A program made the position numbers and the translations under genes. A DNA stretch of 37,248 nt from Octopus sinensis (lineage: Eukaryota): positions 1 to 37,248 of the forward strand of contig NW_021836836.1 of the NCBI RefSeq assembly GCF_006345805.1. The letters run 5' to 3'. The notes under the pieces are model-generated. The model was not told the DNA's origin. It saw only the letters and a program-made list of their open reading frames with translations, and ran no database searches. Below, in pieces: positions 1 through 36,053 of this stretch (positions are counted from its first letter, which is position 1; every line of letters starts with the position of its first letter).

Positions 1-215
1 CCTTTGAAATACAGGTACAAACAGAAACAGGAAGTAAGAGTGAGAGAAAGTTGTGTGAAAGAGTACAAGCAGGGATCACCACCATCGTTGCCGGAGCCTC
101 GTGGAGCTTTAGGTGTTTTCGCTCAATAAGCACTCACAGCGCCCAGTCTGGGAATCGAAACCGCGATCCTACAACCGCGAGTCCGCTGCCCTAACCACTG
201 GGCCATTGCGCCTCC
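1..215 (-). mobile_element. tRNA-derived SINE, family D, 5' part (cut by window start)
   Basis: Minus strand begins ggaggcgcaatggcccagtggttagggcagcgg...gtttcgattccc (A- and B-box-like); near-identical to the copy at 7810-8200. Confidence 0.85.
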
Positions 216-430
216 GGCACGCTGTGCACCGGTAGAGGCAATGTCTATTTGATGGAGAGAATGAGCTTACGTACAGCACAAACATTTGATCACTGTAAGC
301 AAATCTCGTCAGGGTTTTTTCAGGCAGTTCAGTAAGAAATTGCAGAATTGTCTTTCTTGGTCTACAAGAGACTACAAACAGAGCAACAACAGAACAAAGG
401 AAACAAATTATTTTAGCAAGAGACTATTAT

Positions 431-831
431 TCTTTTATTCTTTTACTTGTTTCAGTCATTTGACTGTGGCCATGCTGGAGCACCGCCTTTAGTCGAACAA
501 ATCGACCCCGGGACTTATTCTTTGTAAGCCCAGTACTTATTCTATCGGTCTCTTTGGCCGAACCGCTAAGTTACGGAGACGTAAACACACCAGCATCGAT
601 TGTCAAGCAATGCTAGGGGGACAAACACACACACACACACACATACACACACATATATATATATATACATATATACGACAGGCTTCTTTCAGTTTCCGTT
701 TACCAAATCCACTCACAAGGCATTGGTTGGCCCGGGGCTATAGCAGAAGACACTTGCCCAAGCTGCCACGCGGTGGGACTGAACCCGGAACCGTGTGGTT
801 GGTTAGCAAGCTACTTACAACACAGACACTC
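431..831 (-). mobile_element. tRNA-derived SINE, family A, full length
   Basis: Head with A box tggctgtgtgg-like and B box ggttcagtccc, central (CA/TA)n tract, 3' (TAAAAGAG)n-like tail; matches many copies in the window. Confidence 0.9.
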
Positions 832-1073
832 ATTCATAACTTTGTTTTAAATACCTTATAACCTCTCAATCCTGAACAATTAATAATCTATGAAGAAAAA
901 GAAGTGAATTATTAAAGGAAAATCAGATTCCATTAATGCCTTCTAAACTGCGATTATTTTCCACTGATATTAAATATCTCGCTTCATAAAATCTTTAATT
1001 TCATTTATTTGCCTCAGGTAATGTAATGCTGACAAGTTTTAATAAGAACAAAATAGCACTATAGATGCCTGTC

Positions 1074-1488
1074 TTTCTTTTGTCTTTGCTTGTTCCAGTC
1101 ACTAGACTGCAGCCATGCTGGGGCACTGCCACGAAGGAATATTTTAGTTAAATGAATTGACCCCAGTACTTTTTATTTCTTCCAAGCCCGGTACTTATTC
1201 TATCAATCTCTTTTGCCAAACCACTAGGTTACAGGGATGTAAACACACAAACACCAGTTGTCAAGTAGCAGCAGATGACAAATAGAGACACAAAAAGACA
1301 CACACACACACACACATATAAATACAAAAGACTTCTTTCAGTTTCCACCTACCAAATCCACTCACAAGGCTTTGGTTGGCCTAGGGCTATAGTAGAAGAC
1401 AGTTGCGCAGGGTGCAATGCAGTGGGACTGATCTCAGAGCCATGCATCTGGGAAGCAAACTTCTTACCACACAACCACACCAGCACCT
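1074..1488 (-). mobile_element. SINE family A, older diverged subfamily
   Basis: Same architecture with many substitutions and a variant 3' segment. Confidence 0.8.
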
Positions 1489-1518
1489 AAGACTAGAAGT
1501 TTTTAAAATCTCTACAAT

Positions 1519-1954
1519 ACTCTTTACTCTTTTACTCAGTCATTTGACTGCGGCCATGCTGGAGCACTGCCTTTAATCGAGCAACTCGTCCCCAGGACTT
1601 ATTCTTTTTGTAAGCCCAGTACTTATTATATCGGGCTCTTTTTGCTGAACCCTAAGTAACGGGGACATAAACACACCAGCATCGGTTGTCAAGCAATGCT
1701 AGGGGGACAAACACAGACACACAAAACATATACACACACATACATATATTATAATATATATATTATAATATAATATATATATATATATATACATATATAC
1801 GACAGGCTTCTTTTCAGTTTCCGTCTACCAAATCCACTCACAAGGCTTTGGTCTGCCCGAGGCTATAGTAGAAGACACTTGCCCAAGGTGCCACGCAGTG
1901 GGACTGAACCCGGAACCATGTGGTTGGTAAACAAGCTACTTACCTCACAGCCAC
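1519..1954 (-). mobile_element. SINE family A
   Basis: Close match to other family A copies. Confidence 0.9.
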
Positions 1955-2024
1955 AGCAATGAGTATGAAAAACAAAATTTTCATTTTTGTGTAATTTAGA
2001 CAACAGTTTATTCACTGCAACCTG

Positions 2025-2062
<38 letters not shown>

Positions 2063-2579
2063 ATATGCACCCACAAACTTATATATCACTATCCAGCACT
2101 TAATATGAGATTGTCAGGATGAGTAGCAAAATTCTGATATTTTAAACCTCCAATCATCCCATCATACTTATACTATCCTGGATGCATTCTGAATTATCTC
2201 CAATGCCAAAAAAAAAAAAAAACACTTGAGGTTACTACTCTAGTATTAAATGTTGTTGTCATCACAGTTGGTGTTGTTGTTGTTGTTGTTGCAGTTCTGG
2301 TTATGGCCCTCTCTTGCCTTCCCACCCAGGAATGAAGGTGAATAAAGTGAAGTGAAATATAAACCATTTGAATGAAAAAATTGAAGAAGATAAATATTTC
2401 AGACTAAAAACCAAAAACCATCCATCTCTCCACCCTGTTAATATTTTTAAAAATTCATTTGTTCCATTTTGATGTTCTTTTTCATAAATCTAAACATGTG
2501 TGTGTCTCCCTAAACTCTCTGCACATGAAATGTCAAGGATTTTCAATGAAGAACTGTATCAGTGAGTTATAACTAACTA

Positions 2580-3108
2580 CATCATCATCATCATCATCGT
2601 TTAACATAGTCTTTCCATGCTAGCATGGGTTGAATGATTTGACTGAGGTCTGGCGAACCAGATGGCTGCACCAGGCACCAATCTTGATCTGGCAAAGTTT
2701 CTACAGCTGGATGCCCTTCCTAACGCCAACCAATCCGAGAGTGTAGTGGGTGCTTTTTAAGTGCAACCGGCATGAGGGCCAGTCAGGTGGGGTCGATTAA
2801 ATAAGTACCAGTTACGCACTTGGGTCGATGTAATCGATTTAATCCATTTGTCTGTCCTTGTTTGTCCCCTCTGTGTTTAGCCCCTTGTGAGTAGTAAAGA
2901 AATAAGTACTTAGCCCCTTGTGGGTAATAAAGAAATAGGTACTGGCAACGGCCACAAAAGGAATTGTTTTTTTTCTCATTATTTTACGTGTCACCTGCAA
3001 ACCGGCACAAGTGCCAGTAAGGCAACACTGTTAACGATCACGCTTGAATGGTGCTTTTTACGTGCCACTGGCACGAACACCAGTTAGCCACTCTGGTAAC
3101 GATCACGT
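2580..3108 (-). mobile_element. RTE-type LINE 3' UTR with (GAT)n tail, interrupted by a SINE B fragment
   Basis: (cat)n at 2580, palindrome ccatgctagcatgg 2615-2628, ggatgcccttcctaacgccaacc core; homologous to the UTR that follows an RTE-like ORF end at 28717-29106. Confidence 0.75.
2790..2942 (+). mobile_element. SINE family B, 5'-truncated, with duplicated 33-bp 3' end
   Basis: Matches the 3' half of 19961-20192; ttagccccttgtg...aaagaaata(a/g)gtac occurs at 2877-2909 and 2910-2942. Confidence 0.85.
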
Positions 3109-3355
3109 GTAGTATGACACCCCCACCACACACACATTGATTTATTGCCATCTATGTACGCAAACTTCCATGTAAACAATTGTGGGCACACACGTACACA
3201 CGCACATTGAGCGAGTGTCTTTGTGGGGATGTTTTTCACTCCCCTCTACATTGTTTGACAAACGGTGTTGGTTTGTTTACCTCCTGGTAACTTAGTGGTT
3301 CAGCAAAAGAGATCGAATAGAATAAATAGCAGACATAAAAGAAAGCCTAAGACAT

Positions 3356-3785
3356 ACTCTTTTACTCGTTTCAGTCATTTGACTGCGGCCATGCTGGAGC
3401 ACCGCCTTTAATCGAGCAACTCGACCCCGGGACTTATTCTTTGTAAGCCCAGTACTTATTCTATCGGTCTTTTTTGCAGAACCGCTAAGTGATGGGGACA
3501 TAAACACACCAGCATCGGGTGTCAAGCAATGTAGGGGGACAAACACAGACACACAAACACACAATACCACACATATATAGTATATATATATATAATATAT
3601 ATATCTATATATACACACATATATATAACAGGCATCTTTCATTTCCATCTACAAATCTAACACACGGCTTTGGTCGCACGAGGCTATAGTAGAAGACACT
3701 TGCCCAAGGTGCCACGCAAGTGGGACTGAACCCGGAACCATGTGGTTGGTAAACAAGCTACTTACCACACAGCCACTCCTGCGCC
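3356..3785 (-). mobile_element. SINE family A, inserted into an older plus-strand A-related copy (about 3205-3345 and 3791-3854)
   Basis: Full-length match; both flanks are consecutive pieces of a degenerate A 3' half. Confidence 0.85.
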
Positions 3786-4139
3786 TATGGTCGTGATTTG
3801 TTAATGGCTGCACTCCAAAATAGTCAGTGACTGAAACAAGTAAATAATAAGAGACACACACACACACACACACACACACATAAGTATGTGTGGATTGAGA
3901 TGATGCAAAATATAAATACTCGGAGTATATTTCCCCAAGTAATAAACACATCTGTCAGCGATATTGATAAAATGGACAGATATTTATTTTATTAGTCTCA
4001 TACAATTGTCATATCCAGAGTCCTAGACTTTAGATCAAATTATGTGCGTGGTTGCTTGTGCATGTTTTTGCGCATGAACATGTATGTGTGTGTATATATC
4101 CTTACACATATACATACATATTTACGTACACACAACACA

Positions 4140-4372
4140 TCTATATATATATACAATATATATATATATATTATATATCTATATATCTATATCTATATAT
4201 ATCTATATATATATAATATATATATATCTATCTATATATTATATATATATCTATATATATCTATATCTATTATATATTATATATATCTATATCTATATAT
4301 ATCTATTATCTATATATATATATATCTCTATAATATCTATATCTATTCTATATCTATATATATATCTATATC

Positions 4373-8200: not shown

Positions 8201-8389
8201 TCATTGCTATTATAACAACCTCTGCTACTCGGAGCTGAATAACTGGCCAAATACACTCACCTCCTCATTTCATTACTTATATTGCATCCATCACTGCACA
8301 AACCACCAACCCAAGTCCTTGCTCATCCCTCTGGAACTCACTCTCCCTGCTCCTGCTTCTCGTGACAATGTCAACTTACAACTGTTTAA

Positions 8390-8776
8390 CCTTTTAGAAT
8401 TCAGATTATTCTATCGAATGTAATGCTTTTACACGCACTTTCTTTTCAATTAATCATTAATTTATAGCTCCAAAATTTCGATGATGTCATTCTTTTACTC
8501 TTTTACTCTTCTACTTGTTTCAGTCATTTAACTGCGGCCATGCTGGAGCACCGCCTTTAGTCGAGCAAATCGACCCCGGGACTTATTCTTTGGAAGCCCA
8601 GCACTTATTCTATCGGTCTCTTTTGCCAAACCGCTAAGTGACGGGGACGTAAACACACCAGCATCGGTTGTCAAGCAATGCTAGGGGGACAAACACAGAC
8701 ACTGTTTCCATATTTCCTGAGCGCCTATTAGTAATTGTTCCACTGTTGTTTTTTGTTTTCCCGTTTGGATTAAAAT

Positions 8777-8808
<32 letters not shown>

Positions 8809-9105
8809 ATATATATATACATATATACGACAGGCTTCTTTCAGTTTTCCATCTACCAAATCCACTCACAAGGCATGGTCGGCCCGGGGCTATAGCAGAA
8901 GACACTTGCCCAAGATGCCACGCAGTGGGACTGAACCTGGAACCATGTGGTTGGTTAGCAAGCTACCTACCACACAGCCACTCCTGCGCCATTGTATATT
9001 TTATAATGGCATTGAAGAGTAGGTGTGATAGGCTGGATCTGGCTGGCTAGAACATAAAACCAGAAGTATATTTGGGCCAGAAATGGCCAGTTTGAATGTT
9101 AATAG
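8390..9105 (+). mobile_element. piggyBac-type MITE (about 210 bp when empty) carrying a SINE A insertion
   Basis: TTAA at 8386-8389 and 9106-9109; degenerate ccctttagcatt/aatgctaaaggg termini; internal match to the other three copies. Confidence 0.7.
8492..8990 (-). mobile_element. SINE family A, full length, inside the MITE
   Basis: Close match to family consensus. Confidence 0.9.
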
Positions 9106-12967: not shown

Positions 12968-13203
12968 ACTCTTTACTCTTTTTACTCTTTTACTTGTTTC
13001 AGTCTTTTGACTGCGGCCATGCTGGAGCACTACCTCCAATCGAGCAAATCGACCCCGGGACTTATTCTTTTTGTAAGCCCAGTACTTATTCTATCGGTCT
13101 CTTTTTGCCGAACCGCTAAGTGACGGGGACATAAACACACCAGCATCGGTTGTCAAGCATGCTAGGGGAACACACACAACACACACAACACACACCTACA
13201 ATA

Positions 13204-13246
<43 letters not shown>

Positions 13247-13406
13247 TACGACAGCTTCTTTCAGTTTCCGTCTACCAAATCCACTCACAAGGCATTGGTC
13301 GGCCCGGGGCTATAGCAGAAGACACTTGCCCAAGATGCCACGCAGTGGGACTGAACCCGGAACCATGTGGCTGGTTAGCAAGCTACTTACCACACAGCCA
13401 CTCCTG
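12968..13406 (-). mobile_element. SINE family A, full length
   Basis: Close match to family consensus. Confidence 0.9.
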
Positions 13407-13604
13407 TTTTCTATCCTATTTTTATTTGCTCCACCCACCATCGAAGGGGATCGATTGTAACTGAGTTGAGGCAGGAGACAACACAAGGACACATAAATTT
13501 CAATGGAAGGAAGGAAGGAAGGAAGGATGATAGAATCGATCGGTCGATTGGAAGTCTGCAGCTATCCTTCCAATGAAATTTATGTCCTTGTGTTATAGGG
13601 TTGG

Positions 13605-13925
13605 CTGGCTGGCTGGCTGGTGGGATGGTGGGATGGATGGTTAGAAAAACCATTGGATGGTTTGAAAGATGGATGCATGCATGCATGGTCGAATGGATAG
13701 ATGTTTGAAGAGCCTGATGGATGAACTGATAGATGGATAGGAAATGGATGGATGGATGGATATCAGGATAGTTTGATGGATGGATACTGAATGGATGGGT
13801 GGACGAATGGATAAATGCATGTATCCTTGGGTGGATGGAGAGATAAATGGATAATTAGATGGATGGATGCATGGATGCGTACACTGTTGGATGGTTGGAG
13901 GGATGGAGGGATTGATGGATAGCTG
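13605..13925. repeat. Degenerate (GGAT)n tetranucleotide satellite
   Basis: Direct inspection. Confidence 0.85.
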
Positions 13926-14395
13926 AATGGCCAATCCACCACCAGTTTAACACCATCTTCTGCCCCTTAATCATCTTTCATGTGATGTGGTCTAAGTGCC
14001 ACAATCTGTGGGATGGTGTCATGTTGTGAGGTGTGGTGTGCTCTAGAGTGGTAAACACCAGTGTGGTATTGGTGCAGTCCAGTGAATAGTAGTATAGGAT
14101 GGTGTAATATCATGTGGAGTACTGTGGTATATAATGAACTGCAATGTGTTACGGTTTGGTTCAGTGTTGGGAGGTAGTCATATGTGGTGTGATGTAATGT
14201 CATGTAGTACGCAGCAATAACATGTGGTTTCATGCAGTATATAATACAGTATGGCCTAGTGTGGTGTAGTCTTGTGTTGAGTGGTGTAGTTTAGCCCTTT
14301 AGCATTCAGATTATTCTGCCAAATGAAATGCTTATTTATTCACATTGTTTTGAATTAATCATGCATTGTCTCATAGCTTTGAGATTTCAATGATG

Positions 14396-14556
14396 ATCAT
14401 CATCATCATTTAATGTCCATGTTCCGTGCTAGCGTGGGTGGGACGTTACCACAAGAGCCAGCCAGGCCAAAGCCTGCACCAGACTTCTCTGATTGTACTG
14501 GCAGGATTTTTACAGCTGGGTGCCCTTCGTAACACCAACCTCTCAGCAGAGTGGAC
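14396..14556 (-). mobile_element. RTE-type 3' end with (GAT)n tail (3' part of the chimera)
   Basis: (cat)n, tttaatgtccatgttcc, ttttacagctgggtgcccttcgtaacaccaacc; homologous to 2580-2750, 25253-25420 and 28930-29106. Confidence 0.85.
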
Positions 14557-14564
14557 AATAGAGA

Positions 14565-14858
14565 GTGAGGCCGTGCTTTCACGGTCTGTATTCATACTGG
14601 AAATCAAGATTGAGCAAGCTTTTGCCCTTTTGCTCAACATAGGGTTTCAGTCCGTACTGAGCTCAGGACGCCTGTGTTACTGTTTGACAGACATACCACC
14701 CCAGTCAAACTCCCCGACCAACATTGTTCTCGACTAAGTTTCATGCATCCGTGCCCGCAAAAGTGCTCAACATGCACCGTGTGCTTCGCACCAGATAATG
14801 AATCACCACTCAGCAATGGCCTGATCCCTTCTCCATCGAGTGAGTGAGCAAACTACAG
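14565..14858 (-). rRNA. 28S rRNA-derived pseudogene fragment (domain V region around the P-loop), not a functional rRNA gene
   Basis: Minus strand has ggggagtttgactggggtggtatgtctgtcaaacagtaacacaggcgtcct and agcaaaagggcaaaagcttgctcaatcttgatttccagtatgaatacagaccgtgaaagcacggcctcac, matching conserved LSU GGGGAGUUUGACUGGGGCGG and GAGCAAAAGGGCAAAAGC...GAAUACAGACCGUGAAAGC; several differences are CpG-type transitions. Confidence 0.92.
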
Positions 14859-15126
14859 AATGATGTGATTGTATGTTTCTAGAATAATATTATAGGGGAG
14901 CTAAGAGGGGCCAGATCTGACCAGTTTGAACATAAAACGGGTAGAATATTTGGGCTGGATATGGCTGGTTTAAATGCTAAAGGGTTAGAGCAGTGTGATG
15001 TCACATGGAGTGGTGGAGTGCATGCCATTGTGCAGCACAGTGCAGTGTGGTGGAGAACTGTGAAGTAATTTGATGTGCAGCTCATTGCAGTTAGATCTGA
15101 TGTTGTGTGATTTCTTGCAATACAAT

Positions 15127-15548
15127 ACTCTTCATTCTTTTACTTGTTTCAGTCATTTGACTGCAGCCATGCTGGAGCACTACCTCCAATCGAGCAAATC
15201 GACCCCAGGACTTATTCTTTTGTAAGCCCAGTACTTATTCTATCGGTCTCTTTGCCGAACCGCTAAGTAACGGGGACATAACACACCAGCATCGGTTGTC
15301 AAGCAATGCTAGGGGGACAAACACAGACCCAAAACACACCGCATATAATATATATATATATTATATATATATAATTATACATATATACGACGGGCTTCTT
15401 TCAGTTTCCGTCTACCAATCCACTCACAAGCTTTGGTAGGCCCGAGGCTATAGCAGAAGACACTTGCCCAAGGTGCCACGTAGTGGGACTGAACCCGGAA
15501 CCATGTGGTTGGTAAACAAGCTACTTACCACACAGCCACTCCTGCGCC
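15127..15548 (-). mobile_element. SINE family A, full length
   Basis: Close match to family consensus. Confidence 0.9.
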
Positions 15549-15904
15549 TATGGTATAATTCATCACAATACAGCAGAGAGCAGTGGGGTGTAACAACGAC
15601 AATGTGAATTCTAGTGCAGCACATGGTGCACCGTGGTGTGATGTAGCAGTGTAATATTATGATGATGGCATGTGTAATGCAGTGTAGTGTAGTGTACTGT
15701 TGTTTGTTGTAGTGTGTGGTATGGTAAAGCATAATGTAGCAGAGTGTGTGCTAACATTTTAGATTTAGTTACAGTTCTAATGTGTAACCAGTCATCGAAC
15801 TTTTGATATAAAATAACTTATACACAATTTGTAAAGCAGCAAGGTATAATAATAATAAATTATTTTACACCTTTGTGTTTGCTTTCCATCTTCCTTTTGG
15901 CTAC

Positions 15905-16250
15905 CTATTATTTTATTAATATTATTATTATTGTTATTATTAATACCATTATTATTATTATTATTATTATTAATACCATTATTATATTATTATTATTATT
16001 AATACCATTATTATTATTATTATTATTATTATTAATACCATTATTATTATTATTATTATCATTATTATCATATTATTAACATTATTATTATTATTATTAT
16101 GATTATTATTATTATGATTACCATTATTATTATTATTATTATGATCATTATTATTATTATTATTATTATTACCATTATTATTATCATTATTATTATTATT
16201 ATCATTATTATTATCATTATTATTATTATCATTATTATTATTATTATCAT
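15905..16250. repeat. (ATT)n/(CAT)n trinucleotide tract
   Basis: Direct inspection. Confidence 0.95.
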
Positions 16251-17210
16251 TGCTTCCCTCTTTCATTTATTTATTTCCTTAGTTTTCTCAGAGTTAATCA
16301 AACAAAACTAATATAATTATTTAAACCAAATACCTTCATTACTTGGCTCGTTTTGTATTTTGGGGGGATTTTTGGGGGGGGATTTTTTTTTGGAGGGGAG
16401 GATTCTTTTTTTTACATTTTTATTATATTTATTTATTCACACTTTCATTATTATTATTTTTTTTTTTGCCTTCTTTATCTTTCAGGAACAGTTATTTAAA
16501 ATAATATAGCCACCATACTGTACAAACATTGTTCCCTCCTCCATCCATTCTGCTACACTACAAACCATAACCACCACCACCACCACCACCACCACCACAT
16601 ATACCTTAAAAATACAAAAAAAAAATTTTTTTTTTAAAAATCTACCAACCTAGAACAAAATAAAAAATAAAACGTACATGACATAAAAATTGAGAAAAAA
16701 AAACCACCGACAGCAATACTAATAAAAGCTGTCTATAAAGCAGCAAAAGGAGGAGGAGGCTGGAAACAACAACTGCCTCACAACAACTACTACAAATAAT
16801 AATAACGATGATGGTGATGATGATGATGATGATGAGAAAAACAACGCAAGAAACACCAAACTGAGAAAATTGGCAATGTTTGACAAGCAATAAACCAGTC
16901 AAAATCACAAATTATCTTGCATCAATGAAGCTTAGTATACAAGAAAGATTTCAAAACCCCCACACCCCACCCCACTCCAAATAAAAAATAAATAAATAAA
17001 GTGAAAGCAAATAAAATGAAATATAAAAAATCACTGCTCTGCATACACATATGCACTCTCACCACGACCACCACTGCTACCATACGAATGCACTCCCCAC
17101 CTCTCCTTGCCAAGAAAAAAACAAAAACCCTAATTCAGTCATATTTTTAGAATTGTTATGCCACAAACCACCATGTAATACCACAAATATAATACTAAAT
17201 ACAGAGTTTA

Positions 17211-27505: not shown

Positions 27506-27620
27506 TAAAAATTCAGTAAGATTTCTTTCATATAAACTGACTGGTTATGGAGGTCCAGTGGAGTAAAATAAGAATCAAAGGAATCCAAAAGCAGAAAATG
27601 GTTGTTAACCACTGGATCAA

Positions 27621-27827
27621 TCCTTTAGCATTTAAACTGACCCATACCCAGCCAAAATATTCTTACATTCAGGTACTCTTCTTATACCTTACCTCTCCTA
27701 AGTCATTCTAAAAATAAACAACCCCATCGCCCAAATCTCAAAGCTACAAGATAAAGGCGTGATTAAATTCAAAACAATATAAACAAATGAGCATTGCACT
27801 TGAAAGAGAAAGCTAAGCGCTAAATGG
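27621..27827 (-). mobile_element. piggyBac-type MITE, uninterrupted, diverged
   Basis: cctttagcattt ... gcgctaaatgg followed by TTAA (27828-27831); interior is the reverse complement of the other copies. Confidence 0.7.
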
Positions 27828-28157
27828 TTAAAGCGTGATGAAGGGCCAAGCCCATGTGTACATGTGCACAAGTACAAAAAAGTCTGTTATTGGAAGCAAC
27901 CTTGGAATCATTTATCATTGAAAAAAAAAAACAGAAAAAAAAAGAAACTCTCTCTACACCAAACATACTTGCATGCAATATAAAATATATCAAATTCTAA
28001 TAAAGAACTTCCCTTCTTGACAGTGTCATAGGAAAAGTGTATTTGGCATGACCACATTGGTAGGACAGTATTGCATTACTGCCTTTATTCAGTCTATTAA
28101 ATCAGAAATCTGTTGAACAAGGTCCATTAAATTCAAGATTTAATGTGTATATGTTAT

Positions 28158-29124: not shown

Positions 29125-29158
<34 letters not shown>

Positions 29159-29309
29159 GATAGATAGATAGATAAGATAGACAGACAGACAGACAAGATA
29201 GATAGATAGATAAGATAGATAGACAGACAAGATAGATAGATAGATAGATAGATAAGATAGACAGACAGACAAGATAGATAGATAGATAGATAGATAAGAT
29301 AGACGGATG

Positions 29310-29350
<41 letters not shown>
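29112..29350. repeat. (AGAT)n/(AGAC)n compound microsatellite
   Basis: Direct inspection. Confidence 0.95.
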
Positions 29351-29351
<1 letters not shown>

Positions 29352-30608
29352 TATTAGATCATCCCATAAGTGATGTCCAGACTTCTATATTTTCAATTTG
29401 TGAATGCTTTAACAGTATTTTAGAATGTCTAATGGCATCAAGCAGGATAATCTAATTGAAATTTCACGAATTATAGCTCTTCAAATATGGAAGTGCCTAA
29501 GGAGCATATAATACTTCATGAGTCTAAAAAGGGCAACTCTGCAGCTAAAGCGACTTCAAATATCCACTCAGCTTATGGAGAAGAGTGCAGAAGTGGAGAT
29601 TTCAGCCTTCATTCATCATCATTGTTCGACCGTGGTTGAGACAATGGAATTTACCATGCTACGCCAGACTTCACGGTCCATCATGGAATTACGGAGGTCC
29701 TGTTGCTGGATGCCTGTATCCCTGGAGATTACATCAGGGTAGGAGAGTGTGTGCCCTCTGGTATTGTGAGTAGATAGCTTCCAGAGGAGAAGAGTAGAAA
29801 TTGCCTCGTTTTCAGCTCTACAACAATGTCCAGCAAACTGGACTCTTCTACCTTTCACAAGAGATGATACAGGTGGTAATTTCCCATATATTTGTACTTT
29901 GGTTGGATGGTGCCTCCACGAGAGATTTTGAGCTCTCATAAGGAGGCGAGTGTAGGTTCCATCCAACCACCTCTCAAGCTTCTTTGATAACGTCCAGGTT
30001 TCTGAGCCATATAGTAGAATTAGTTTGACTGTGGCTTTGAAGATTTCAAGTTTGAAGTCTCTACTTAGATTTGATGACCAGATCTTATGCATGTCCAAAC
30101 AAGACATCCAATTAAGTTTGATGTCAAGTGCCTTTTGATAGAACTTGAAAAAGATCTTGTAGTTTCAGTTGAAGAATTGGCAAACAAGCTTTGTTCAAGC
30201 CATACAATTGTTCACTGCCATCTTCAACAGCTTGGAAAGGTCCCAAAACTCTGAAAATGGGTACTTCGTGATTTATCTGAAGCCAACCGCAAATCCCAAA
30301 TGAACACCTTCTCTTCTCTTTGTTCTCATGGACTCATCTCACCCTTTTTAGACAGGCTGGTGACCGGTGACGTAAAATGGGTCTTTCATCAAAATGTTAA
30401 GAATTGTAGACATCGGCTTGGTGAAGGGGAAAAAGCCCAATCACAACCAAAAAGGGAATTCCATGCAAAGAAGGTCCTTCTTTCTGTTGGTGGGATTGCA
30501 ATGGAATCATCCACTTTGAGTTGATACCAACTAATGCAACAATCAATGCTCAAATCTACTGTCAGCAATTAGACCATTTAAACGCTGCTTTAAAGAAGCA
30601 GTGTTCAA
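29352..30608 (+). pseudogene. mariner transposon remnant (5' end plus transposase fragments at 29487-29610 and 30101-30608), split by an RTE insertion
   Basis: TA then ttagatcatcccataagtgatgtcc (putative TIR); MEVPKEHI..KKGNSAAKATSNIHSAYGEEC..RSGDFSL; KWVLRDLSE; FLDRLVTGDVKWVF; KKVLLSV(W)WDCNGIIHFELIP..TINAQIYCQQLDHL (WVPHEL, TGDEKW and LCVWWD motifs of DD34D transposases); one in-frame stop and a frameshift. Confidence 0.92.
29611..30100 (-). mobile_element. RTE-clade LINE, 5'-truncated ORF end with (TGA)n tail and no 3' UTR
   Basis: FKATVKLILLYGSETWTLSKKLERWLDGTYTRLLMRAQNLSW...RRVQFAGHCCR...DREVWR; LLYGSETW is typical of the RTE C-terminal region; stop runs directly into tgatgatga. Confidence 0.92.
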
Positions 30609-32075: not shown

Positions 32076-32224
32076 TCATCATCATCATCATTTAGCGTCC
32101 GTTTTCCATGCTAGCATGGGTTGGACGGTTTAACTGGGGTCTGTGAAGCCGGAAAGCTTCATCAGGCCCAGTCAGATCTGGCAGTGTTTCTACGGCTGGA
32201 TGCACTTCCTAACTCCAACCACTC
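32076..32224 (-). mobile_element. RTE-type 3' UTR fragment with (GAT)n tail
   Basis: (cat)n; ccatgctagcatgg at 32106-32119. Confidence 0.8.
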
Positions 32225-32314
32225 CATATATACATACATATATATATGTATATACATACATACATGTATATACATATATACATGTATATACATACATTTA
32301 TACATATCACCGTA

Positions 32315-32740
32315 ATTGTTCGACCGTGGTCGAGACAATGGAATTTACCATGCTACGCCAGACTTCACGGTCCATCATGGCATTACGGAGCTCCTGTTGC
32401 TGGGTGCCTGTATCCCTGGAGATTACATCAGGGTAGGAGAGTGTGCGCCCTCTGGTATCATGAGCAGATGGCTTCCAGAGGAGAAGAGTAGAAAGTACCT
32501 CGTTTTCAGCTCTACAACAGTGTCCAGCAAACTGGACTCTTCTACCTTTCACAAGAGATGACACAGGTGGTAGTTTCCCATATATTTGTACTTTAGTTGG
32601 ATGATGCATCCACGAGAGATTTTGAGCTCTCATAAGGAGGCGAGTGTAGGTTCCATCCAACTACCTCTCAAGCTTCTTTGATAACATCCAGGTTTCTGAG
32701 CCATACAGTAGAGCTGGTTTGACTGTGGCTTTGAAGATTT
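32315..32740 (-). mobile_element. RTE-clade LINE fragment, same family as 29611-30100
   Basis: DGTYTRLLMRAQNLSW...DREVWRSMVNSIVSTTVEQ; nucleotide match to the first copy. Confidence 0.9.
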
Positions 32741-32749
32741 TATATACTG

Positions 32750-32860
32750 AAGGGTGGTCTCTAGACACTGAACCTTACAGAGGAGATGACAAAGGACCAA
32801 GACATCTGGCACCTTGCTCTACACAAGAAGACCCGCACCTACAGCAGAAGTGTTAATGCC
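32750..32860 (+). mobile_element. Possible RTE ORF C-terminal fragment of another family
   Basis: TLNLTEEMTKDQDIWHLALHKKTR resembles the ORF ends at 28717 and 18040-18131. Confidence 0.45.
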
Positions 32861-35446: not shown

Positions 35447-35585
35447 CTAGAAATCCGAGCATCAATTTAAATTTCTCATTTCCTCTTTTTAATTATCGTT
35501 ATACAATCTGTGAGGCATATTTTACGCATATTGAACAATACTTTGGATTTGCAAAGTGTTCCTTTTATAATCTATAGCAGTTTAA

Positions 35586-36053
35586 CCCTTAAGTATTCAA
35601 ACTAACTATATCTGGCCAAAATATTCTGTTTTATGTTTAAATTGGTCAGGTCCGACCTCTCACACCTACCCTACAATGTCACTCTATGAATAAGCAACCA
35701 CGTCGTCAAAATCTCAAAGCTATGAGATAATGCAGGATTAATTCAAACAATGTGAATAAAGGAGATGTACTCGCATAGCAAGTGACTTGATCTGAGATCG
35801 TGTGCTGGAACGAAAACAATTGCAGCGTGGAAGGTGTTTGTAAGCCATTTAAGAAACACACAAAAGCCGTTCAATTCACTCCAACATTTAAGTTTAATTT
35901 GTCAAAATATTTTCGCCGCTTTAAGATCGCGACCTGTTCACTGGCAAAAATCCGTGCTGCATCTGAGAAAGTAACAGTTAGTTCGTCAGATATATGTACG
36001 TATGTATGTGTGTATGTGAATGAACAAGTATTGCATTTGCATTTAACAAAGGG
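35586..36053 (-). mobile_element. piggyBac-type MITE carrying a 253-bp insertion
   Basis: TTAA-ccctt at 35582-35590 and aaaggg-TTAA ending 36057; interior matches the other copies. Confidence 0.7.
35761..36013. mobile_element. Unclassified short retroelement with a hammerhead-like motif on the minus strand
   Basis: Flanked by atgtgaat(a/g)aa at 35750-35760 and 36014-36024 (putative TSD, 1 mismatch); ends in (tatg)n; motif at 35898-35948. Confidence 0.55.

What the first reader, a model, noticed from the sequence alone, without database searches (positions are those of the whole stretch)
14389..14865. 28S rRNA-RTE chimeric retrocopy inserted as one unit: possible rRNA-headed SINE or template-switch retrogene
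Seen: on the minus strand, about 295 nt of 28S rRNA (14858 to 14565, including the P-loop motif) is fused through about 8 unassigned nt to an RTE-type 3' end with (GAT)n tail (14556 to 14396), both in sense orientation. The 463-bp unit is flanked by a 7-bp duplication aatgatg (14389-14395, 14859-14865). It interrupts a MITE whose other copies in this window have that site only once, so it arrived as a single insertion. Established: LINE RT template switching produces U6-L1-type chimeras, and 28S-derived SINEs are known in mammals. Inference: either a one-off switch from an RTE-tailed RNA onto 28S rRNA, or a member of a 28S-headed, RTE-mobilised SINE family. I know of no such family in cephalopods but could not search.
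Basis: partly seen in the sequence, partly recalled or inferred. Interest (0 to 1): 0.85.

Follow-up and report, generated by a model that had tools for sequence, protein, structure and literature searches.

The report
One-off 28S rRNA–SINE chimeric retrocopy
A 292-base piece of the octopus's own 28S ribosomal RNA was copied into the genome fused to a short mobile element in a single event; this is a known kind of accident (as with U6/L1 and 28S/L1 chimeras in mammals) and not a new mobile-element family, though it recurs in this genome at a fixed point of the 28S.

Summary
On the minus strand, 14860-14569 is a host 28S fragment. Twelve unassigned bases follow, then a 161-nt retroposon module ending in (TGA)n (14556-14396). 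A 7-bp duplication flanks the whole unit. It sits in a 228-bp MITE whose 41 or more other copies have the site once.

The junction occurs once in 2.72 Gb, so this is a single chimeric retrocopy, not a 28S-headed SINE family. The "RTE 3' end" is really the 3' module of a very abundant SINE-type family. It shares only its last 14 nt, AACAA(TGA)n, with an abundant RTE-like LINE, two copies of which lie in this window.

The 80% identity to 28S is mostly CpG decay. Non-CpG divergence is 6%.

New context: at least nine independent 28S fragments in this genome start within the same 10 nt (reference 3766-3775), at the 3' foot of a GC-rich expansion segment. Six are followed directly by a sense-oriented SINE piece. 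Most end before the recently reported octopus-specific H88 break of 28S, 35 nt beyond this copy's end.

Verdict: real, and a new member of a known kind. I could not separate template switching from RNA ligation before reverse transcription. Moderate interest.

The parts
14859..14865 (.). Target-site duplication, copy at the element's 5' side (aatgatg on +, catcatt on -). Its last 2 nt (TT) can also be read as the first 2 nt of the 28S piece.
14569..14860 (-). 28S rRNA fragment, host reference positions 3768-4078 (L1-stalk side of domain V through the P-loop to just before helix 88). It carries two deletions of 9 and 5 nt.
   Evidence: Non-CpG divergence is 13/215; CpG positions changed are 32/77.
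14557..14568 (-). 12-nt linker TCACTCTCTATT, not assignable to either partner.
14410..14556 (-). Body of 'unit C', the 3' module of a very abundant SINE-type family. It starts at the family's recurrent module boundary GTCCACTCTGCTGAG.
14396..14409 (-). Microsatellite tail ATGATGATGATGAT, i.e. (TGA)n/(GAT)n.
14389..14395 (.). Target-site duplication, copy at the element's 3' side.
14290..14388 (.). Left part of the interrupted host MITE. The MITE is 228 bp without the insert, has CCCTTTAGCATT/AATGCTAAAGGG inverted ends and is flanked by TTA.
14866..14987 (.). Right part of the interrupted host MITE.
29613..30164 (-). Context: 5'-truncated 3' end of the abundant RTE-like LINE. Its ORF stop codon is the first unit of the terminal (TGA)3. 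This LINE is the likely source of the reverse transcriptase.
32307..32820 (-). Context: second 5'-truncated copy of the same LINE's C-terminal coding region.
32078..32224 (-). Context: a second, 5'-truncated unit-C-type copy (72% identical to 14396-14560), placed after a TA/TG microsatellite.

Best explanation
A single target-primed reverse transcription event made this insertion.

1. An endonuclease and reverse transcriptase nicked a MITE copy at ...CAATGATG^. The enzyme most likely came from the abundant RTE-like LINE whose transcripts end in AACAA(TGA)n.
2. It primed on the (TGA)n tail of a roughly 160-nt SINE-type RNA ('unit C') and copied that RNA to, or very near, its 5' end.
3. It then continued on host 28S rRNA, entering near nt 4078-4090. 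That point is 23-35 nt upstream of the free 3' end that the octopus H88 break creates.
4. It ran 5'-wards for about 300 nt and stopped at nt 3768, at the foot of a GC-rich expansion segment.
5. The cDNA end was joined to the second nick 7 bp away, with 2 nt of microhomology, which produced the 7-bp duplication.

The product has no copies and has since decayed, mainly at CpGs.

Shown: the anatomy, the single insertion, single-copy status, host origin of the 28S part, and recurrence of the 5' end.

Inferred: which enzyme acted, template switching as the joining step, and the reason for the stop at 3768.
For: - One 7-bp duplication flanks the whole 463 bp. The uninterrupted site is seen in at least 41 other MITE copies.
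- Both parts are in sense orientation, with the cellular RNA at the 5' side and the retroelement tail at the 3' side.
- The junction is unique in the genome.
- The 28S part matches host-specific expansion-segment sequence. It is 94% identical at non-CpG sites, and 30 of the 32 changes at CpG positions are transitions.
- The junction coincides with the recurrent 5' boundary of unit C. Copies L037, L038 and L040 start at the same base.
- Parallel cases: a 28S piece is followed directly by a sense SINE in L064 (SINE_A from nt 1), L074 (SINE_B from nt 12), L028 and L063 (last 45-49 nt of SINE_B) and L077. That is 6 of 17 short fragments, binomial P 0.0003-0.01.
- Nine loci whose sequence I read start at 28S 3766-3775, corrected P about 4e-5 to 2e-4. 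L074 carries a snap-back inverted copy of 3768-3782.
- The 200 nt upstream of 3768 are 72% GC with -0.56 kcal/nt, against -0.31 to -0.39 downstream.
- The LINE with the same AACAA(TGA)n terminus has at least 12,564 candidate copies, two of them in this window.
- Precedent: 18 28S/L1 chimeras in primates, 83% in sense and often starting at one 28S position (10.1101/2025.02.02.635956).
Against: - The 12-nt linker is long for non-templated addition and remains unexplained.
- The entry point into 28S is internal, 23-35 nt short of the H88 break, so a clean end-to-end jump is not shown here.
- The rough tail consensus gives 11.9% non-CpG divergence against 6.0% for the 28S part. However, that consensus mixes subfamilies, and the best genomic matches are 88-91% identical.
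- Target-site duplications could not be found by a simple search in the other chimeras.
- The LINE's clade was not tested by phylogeny.
- No reads and no other species could be examined.
Confidence: 0.75

Rival explanations
1. RNA ligation before reverse transcription. A cleaved 28S fragment was ligated to the 5' end of the unit-C RNA, as an RtcB-type ligase joins U6 to L1 RNA, and the ligated RNA was then retrotransposed as one template. The anatomy would be the same and only the joining step differs.
For: - The junction lies at the 5' boundary of unit C.
- Octopus 28S is naturally cleaved nearby, at H88 (PMC13321053).
- In L064 the 28S piece ends 3 nt before that break and is joined to nt 1 of SINE_A.
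- The primate study leaves ligation open as a mechanism.
Against: Twelve extra nt sit at the junction, which a clean ligation does not predict. The window's 28S end is not at a known cleavage site. DNA sequence alone cannot separate ligation from template switching.
Confidence: 0.17
2. Two separate insertions. A unit-C copy inserted first with the 7-bp duplication, and a 28S retro-fragment later landed exactly between the 5' duplication copy and the unit's 5' end.
For: SINE-rich DNA makes adjacency common. L056 and L071 show 28S pieces in messier SINE contexts.
Against: - The 28S piece has no tail and no duplication of its own.
- It would have to hit a window of about 12 nt, in the same orientation.
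- Five other loci show the same architecture.
- The non-CpG age of the 28S part is compatible with that of the tail.
Confidence: 0.03
3. Member or founder of a 28S-headed, RTE-mobilised SINE family.
For: rRNA-headed SINEs exist. SINE28 comes from the 28S 3' end, and HaSE3 has a 5S head on a SINE with an RTE-related tail (PMC4758252, PMC3272025).
Against: The junction pattern GAAAGYRYGGCC-N(0-30)-GTCCACTCTGC occurs once in 2.72 Gb. No other hit covers both halves. The other 28S chimeras have different 3' partners and different junctions.
Confidence: 0.02
4. Assembly artefact, or a DNA-level rDNA orphon into which a retroelement inserted.
For: The window is a whole 37-kb unplaced contig. Many DNA-level rDNA pieces are scattered over the chromosomes.
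Against: A precise 7-bp duplication sits inside a MITE that is otherwise colinear with at least 41 copies. No 28S lies beyond either end. CpG decay shows long residence as ordinary genomic DNA.
Confidence: 0.03

Closest known systems
[quoted passage not shown]
   Same: A 28S fragment of a few hundred nt (median 269, range 50-482) is fused 5' to a retroelement 3' part. Most are in sense. The 28S start position is recurrent. All are single-event insertions.
   Different: Here the partner is a SINE-type module with a (TGA)n tail and a presumed RTE-like enzyme, not L1 with poly(A). The recurrent start is at a different 28S position: by my own mapping it lies about 125 nt 5' of the P-loop in yeast terms, whereas the human start at about 3636 is further 5'. 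The host is a cephalopod.
U6/L1 and other bipartite chimeric retrogenes (template-switch model; RNA-ligation model for U6)
   Same: A cellular RNA at the 5' side with a fixed 5' end, a variable-length retroelement 3' part, one target-site duplication, and no amplification.
   Different: The acceptor here is a fragment of a long rRNA rather than a whole small RNA. The donor appears to be copied to its own 5' end.
rRNA-headed SINEs: SINE28 (28S 3' end, mammals) and HaSE3 (5S head, SINE body, RTE-related tail, Helicoverpa; PMC3272025)
   Same: rRNA-derived 5' part joined to a LINE-recognised 3' tail. Such families probably began as chimeras of this sort.
   Different: Those are multi-copy families with a constant junction. 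This element is single-copy, and its 28S piece is internal to 28S with no known promoter.
Octopus-specific H88 break of 28S rRNA (PMC13321053)
   Same: The break motif TATG/CGTC is present in this genome's 28S. It lies 35 nt 3' of where the window's 28S piece ends. One sister chimera (L064) ends 3 nt before it.
   Different: The window's junction is not at the break. The recurrent 5' end at 3768 is not a reported break.

Membership tests
LINE-mediated chimeric retrocopy (U6/L1 type, 28S/L1 type) | Two unrelated RNA-derived parts fused head to tail in the same orientation, with the cellular RNA at the 5' side | tested here: met
   28S at 14860-14569 and unit C at 14556-14396, both on the minus strand
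LINE-mediated chimeric retrocopy (U6/L1 type, 28S/L1 type) | The 3' part ends in the retroelement's own tail, and one target-site duplication flanks the whole | tested here: met
   (TGA)n tail at 14409-14396; 7-bp aatgatg at both ends
LINE-mediated chimeric retrocopy (U6/L1 type, 28S/L1 type) | The empty site shows one insertion | tested here: met
   At least 41 paralogous MITE copies are uninterrupted at the site. The true orthologous or allelic empty site was not available.
LINE-mediated chimeric retrocopy (U6/L1 type, 28S/L1 type) | The joining step is a template switch by the reverse transcriptase | not testable with these tools
   DNA alone cannot separate this from prior RNA ligation
SINE family with an rRNA-derived head | Many copies share the same head-body junction and have different target-site duplications | tested here: not met
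   The junction pattern occurs once in the genome. No other hit spans it.
SINE family with an rRNA-derived head | Own (internal) promoter in the head | not tested
   The piece is internal to 28S. No promoter assay or motif test was done.
RTE-clade LINE (as the origin of the tail and source of the enzyme) | The 161-nt 3' part is the 3' end of the LINE | tested here: not met
   Only the terminal 14 nt AACAATGATGATGA are shared. The rest scores no better than shuffled sequence.
RTE-clade LINE (as the origin of the tail and source of the enzyme) | Single ORF of about 1000 aa with AP endonuclease and reverse transcriptase | tested here: inconclusive
   Open frames reach 1051 aa and end in this C-terminus. 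Relatives 46-61% identical carry Exo_endo_phos_2 + RVT_1, with ORFs of about 1011 aa on 3.6-3.8 kb contigs. No full copy from this genome could be read.
RTE-clade LINE (as the origin of the tail and source of the enzyme) | Very short 3' UTR made of a short tandem repeat | tested here: met
   In the copy at 29613-30164 the stop codon TGA is the first unit of the terminal (TGA)3. The same is described for RTE-2_OV (PMC9115989).
RTE-clade LINE (as the origin of the tail and source of the enzyme) | The reverse transcriptase falls inside the RTE clade in a phylogeny | not tested
DNA-level rDNA orphon | rDNA continues beyond the fragment, or spacer sequence is attached | tested here: not met
   There is only one LSU hit in the window, and both flanks are MITE

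The most novel reading that the evidence does not exclude
Retrocopy ends in this genome may record the ends of real 28S RNA species.

The stretch between nt 3768 and the octopus-specific H88 break (reference 4113/4114) would be the preferred acceptor for template-jumping reverse transcriptases. The break exposes a free 3' end in an extremely abundant RNA, and synthesis then halts at a fixed point, 3768. That halt could be a hard stop at the GC-rich expansion segment or a second, unreported RNA end.

The window's element would then be one fossil of a lineage-specific process. Such fossils could be used to date the origin of the H88 break.
Probability: 0.3. Interest if true: 0.6.

Novelty: new member of a known kind. 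Interest (0 to 1): 0.4.

Why it matters
By itself the element is a dead-on-arrival retrocopy with no sign of function.

Its value is as a clean, well-bounded example showing that chimeric retrocopies also arise in a cephalopod, with a SINE RNA as donor and a microsatellite-tailed, RTE-like enzyme.

The class it belongs to is more useful. At least nine independent copies share a 28S 5' end, and several 3' ends lie near the newly described H88 break. Genomic retrocopies could therefore be mined as a record of rRNA fragment ends and of reverse-transcriptase stops in octopus. They also show the raw material from which rRNA-headed SINEs could arise.

Tried and rejected
- SINE-family hypothesis: rejected by whole-genome DNA and pattern searches.
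- "The 80% identity means an old or foreign 28S": rejected. Non-CpG divergence is 6%, and host-specific expansion sequence is matched.
- "Unit C is the LINE's 3' end": rejected beyond the last 14 nt. The apparent LINE-plus-unit arrangement at 32078-32660 is better read as two neighbouring insertions separated by a microsatellite.
- Site-specific rDNA element as the cause of the shared 28S 5' end: rejected, because the upstream flanks of the nine loci are unrelated.
- Homology of the octopus hot spot with the primate 28S start at about 3636: rejected by my own coordinate mapping through the Rfam model. Both sites do lie just 3' of a GC-rich expansion segment.
- Exact-match search for target-site duplications around the other chimeras: nothing convincing.
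- Search for the LINE partner by sampling reverse-transcriptase hits: the one locus fetched was a poly(A)-tailed LINE.
- One multi-source Rfam call failed.

Full report
**What is there**

Read on the minus strand, the region runs as follows:
- MITE sequence;
- CATCATT (14865-14859);
- 28S-like sequence starting (TT)CTGTAGTTTGCTCAC;
- ...GAAAGCACGGCC (ends at 14569);
- TCACTCTCTATT (14568-14557);
- GTCCACTCTGCTGAG...GGACATTAA (14556-14410);
- ATGATGATGATGAT (14409-14396);
- CATCATT (14395-14389);
- MITE sequence.

Rfam finds one family in the whole window. LSU_rRNA_eukarya matches 14538-14885(-) at 126.8 bits, E 3e-30. Its outermost parts are weak over-extension into the flank and the tail.

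The window is the whole of contig C13307 of a 2.72-Gb, 13,516-contig genome. That genome's 28S carries the motif TATG/CGTC. PMC13321053 reports this motif as conserved in incirrate octopuses.

**The 28S part**

A complete rDNA unit (18S, 5.8S, 28S) lies on L042. I use its LSU hit, L042:3938-8854 (4917 nt), as a coordinate label only. This copy contains a low-GC stretch around 3000-3400 that is probably not rRNA.

The window piece aligns to reference 3768-4078 at about 80% identity. It includes species-specific expansion-segment sequence, so it comes from the host.

I compared it with a consensus of eight long rDNA copies:
- 32 of 77 CpG positions are changed, 30 of them by transitions;
- only 13 of 215 non-CpG positions are changed (6.0%);
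- 41 CpGs have fallen to 11.

The low identity is therefore CpG decay of a CpG-rich sequence after it left the rDNA. It does not indicate great age or a foreign source.

Using the rate in PMC13282606 (Jukes-Cantor distance 0.065 for about 18 My), 6% non-CpG divergence suggests roughly 15-20 My. All sites together would give about 45 My. This is an order-of-magnitude estimate only.

**The tail part**

The 161 nt at 14556-14396 belong to a very abundant family:
- 2743 and 815 first-look candidates in two genome searches;
- about one copy per 15 kb of the DNA I hold.

All copies end in GTTAAA(C/T)(A/G)ATGATGATGA....

Some copies are about 310-nt dimers of two related half-units with a common 5' end (L035, L036, L039). 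Others start exactly at GTCCACTCTGCTGAG, right after TA-rich microsatellites (L037, L038, L040). The window's junction falls at this same boundary. I call the module unit C.

**Is it an RTE 3' end?**

Not literally. The window holds two 5'-truncated 3' ends of an abundant LINE (32307-32820 and 29613-30164, both minus strand).
- Its 117-aa C-terminal peptide has at least 12,564 candidate copies in the genome. The 150 that were scored are 88-94% identical (the window's own copy aside), and open frames reach 1051 aa.
- Relatives in public data that are 46-61% identical have Exo_endo_phos_2 + RVT_1 + this C-terminus. Their ORFs are about 1011 aa on contigs of 3.6-3.8 kb.
- In the 29.6-kb copy the stop codon TGA is the first unit of a terminal (TGA)3, and the element ends there.

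A single long ORF, virtually no 3' UTR and a trinucleotide-repeat tail are what is described for RTE elements and for RTE-2_OV of Octopus vulgaris (PMC9115989). No phylogeny was done, so clade membership is likely but unproven.

Unit C shares only its last 14 nt, AACAATGATGATGA, with this LINE. The rest scores no better than shuffled sequence. Unit C is therefore a SINE-type module that carries the LINE's terminal signature, not LINE body.

**One insertion**

The 7-bp aatgatg flanks the whole 463 bp. The host element is a 228-bp MITE (14290-14388 plus 14866-14987) with 12-bp inverted ends and TTA on both sides.

Joining the flanks in a script gives a sequence that other copies cross without interruption:
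- window copies at 27619-27832 and 35583-35760;
- at least 38 genomic copies at 83-87% identity, aligned from query 301 to 528 across the join at 406/407.

Each of these holds the site once.

The 28S piece has no tail or duplication of its own. The unique flanks outside the MITE have no second copy in the assembly, so no allelic empty site is available.

**One copy**

No other genomic hit spans both halves. The degenerate junction pattern GAAAGYRYGGCC-N(0-30)-GTCCACTCTGC matches only the window. This rules out a SINE family in this genome.

**The wider pattern**

The pattern GTAGTTTCCTCGCTCACTCGATGGAGAAGGGATCGGG (reference 3772-3808, up to 3 mismatches) occurs 38 times. Most hits are long DNA-level rDNA pieces, many of them with spacer attached.

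Nine loci with unrelated flanks begin within reference 3766-3775:

| Locus | Place | 28S reference span |
|---|---|---|
| window | C13307 | 3768-4078 |
| L056 | C16:49.50 Mb | 3767-4253 |
| L070 | C25:28.88 Mb | 3766 to the 3' end |
| L025 | C3:58.30 Mb | 3767-4285 |
| L071 | C6737 | 3770-3930 |
| L074 | C6:61.20 Mb | 3772-3843 |
| L075 | C21:25.58 Mb | 3768-3924 |
| L076 | C22:8.72 Mb | 3773-3837 |
| L077 | C25:18.63 Mb | 3775-3908 |

A tenth locus, C4:96.14 Mb, is inferred only from its query range.

L074 carries an inverted copy of 3768-3782 abutting the sense copy. This looks like a snap-back at a cDNA end.

Among the 20 read loci whose 5' ends lie in 3671-3815, nine fall in this 10-nt window. 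The corrected P is about 4e-5. It is about 2e-4 if I assume that 23 unread fragments all start elsewhere.

The site is on the 3' strand of the helix below a 155-nt octopus insertion near the L1 stalk. The 200 nt upstream are 72% GC and fold at -0.56 kcal/nt, against -0.31 to -0.39 kcal/nt downstream.

**Partners of the other fragments**

Of 17 short 28S fragments, six are followed within 12 nt by a sense-oriented SINE piece, with no matching SINE 5' part upstream:
- the window (unit C);
- L064 (SINE_A from its first base);
- L074 (SINE_B from nt 12);
- L028 (last 49 nt of SINE_B);
- L063 (SINE_B 433-477);
- L077 (a diverged SINE_B-like 3' half, judged by eye).

With SINEs at 11.6% of an octopus genome (PMC13282606), the binomial P is 0.0003-0.01.

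A fixed 5' end of the cellular RNA with a variable length of retroelement 3' part is the hallmark of U6/L1-type chimeras. The same has been described for 28S/L1 in primates: 18 loci, 83% in sense, often starting near one position.

**Relation to the H88 break**

PMC13321053 reports that incirrate octopus 28S is cleaved after transcription in helix 88, at TATG/CGTC. In my numbering that is 4113/4114, which is 35 nt 3' of the window's 28S end.
- Fourteen of the 17 short fragments end before it.
- L064 ends at 4110, 3 nt short of the break, and is fused to nt 1 of SINE_A.
- Three copies have only the 5' side. About 6-12 have only the 3' side.

This suggests that ends of 28S copies pile up at the break. 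I could not read those flanks, and small indels can mimic one-sided copies, as with C11:55359072 and C16:49503348.

**Mechanism**

The best reading is one target-primed reverse transcription event. It began on the (TGA)n tail of a unit-C RNA, moved to 28S rRNA at or near the unit's 5' end, and stopped at 3768.

Joining of the two RNAs by ligation before reverse transcription gives the same DNA and cannot be excluded. The 12-nt linker is unexplained by either model. It could be partly unit-upstream sequence (compare GCACTAAGTCCAC in dimers with TCACT...GTCCAC here) or untemplated.

Two successive insertions, a SINE family and an artefact are each unlikely, for the reasons given under the rival explanations.

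**Novelty**

The kind is known. As far as my four literature searches reach, it has not been described in a cephalopod, with a SINE donor, or with a microsatellite-tailed RTE-like enzyme. The recurrent 28S 5' end and the possible link to the H88 break are the parts worth following up.

Noticed in passing
L041 (G000:C18:17536000-17545999) 1-3810 and 4318: An open frame of at least 1269 aa with a central RVT_1 domain ends about 510 nt before a 28S copy that begins at reference 3392, next to the classic R2 target ...TAGC|CAAATGCC. This looks like an intact-looking R2-type element in an rDNA copy. Groups of rDNA pieces elsewhere start at reference 3341 (6 loci) and 3392 (3 loci).
   Followed up: partly
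L042:3938-8854 (28S reference), positions about 3000-3400: The reference 28S has a 33-46% GC stretch just 5' of the R2 target site, unlike the rest of the gene. It is probably a remnant insertion, so the 4917-nt numbering is only a label.
   Followed up: no
window 8384-9102: Another copy of the same MITE is interrupted by a full antisense SINE_B (8492-8990) only 2-5 nt from the site hit at 14389-14395. This is either a possible local target preference (GATGATG/ATT) or chance.
   Followed up: partly
L037:1501, L038:1501, L040:1501; window 32078-32224: Monomeric unit-C copies start at or near the module boundary directly after TA-rich microsatellites. This suggests insertion into microsatellites, or microsatellite growth at their 5' ends.
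   Followed up: no
L074 (G000:C6:61195027-61198063) about 1480-1515: An inverted copy of 28S 3768-3782 abuts the sense copy (GAGGAAACTACGGAA-TA-GTAGTTTCCTCG). This is a snap-back or foldback exactly at the recurrent 5' end.
   Followed up: partly
G000: C9:67991660, C3227:6625, C12:8549469; and C2:61773606, C6:32042611, C13:37838221, C10:105053243, C730:9051, C12688:3307: These 28S copies hold only the 35 nt 5' of the H88 break, or only the 35 nt 3' of it. They are candidates for retrocopies ending or starting at the natural rRNA break. Their flanks were not read.
   Followed up: no
L070 (G000:C25:28875942 region): A 28S copy runs from the recurrent 5' end (3766) through the H88break to 45 nt past the Rfam 3' end of 28S. 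The template was therefore uncleaved at H88, and possibly a precursor.
   Followed up: partly
window 13500-13930, 15900-16260, 29150-29350: Three simple-repeat tracts: a GGAT/GGAA-type minisatellite, a long (ATT)n tract with ATTAATACC interruptions, and a (GTCT)n/(ATCT)n tract.
   Followed up: no
window 13000-13406 and 15150-15544: Two antisense SINE_B copies (93-100% alike in blocks) bracket the region. SINE_B ends in 8-nt tandem repeats (AGAGTAAA), a different tail type from unit C.
   Followed up: no
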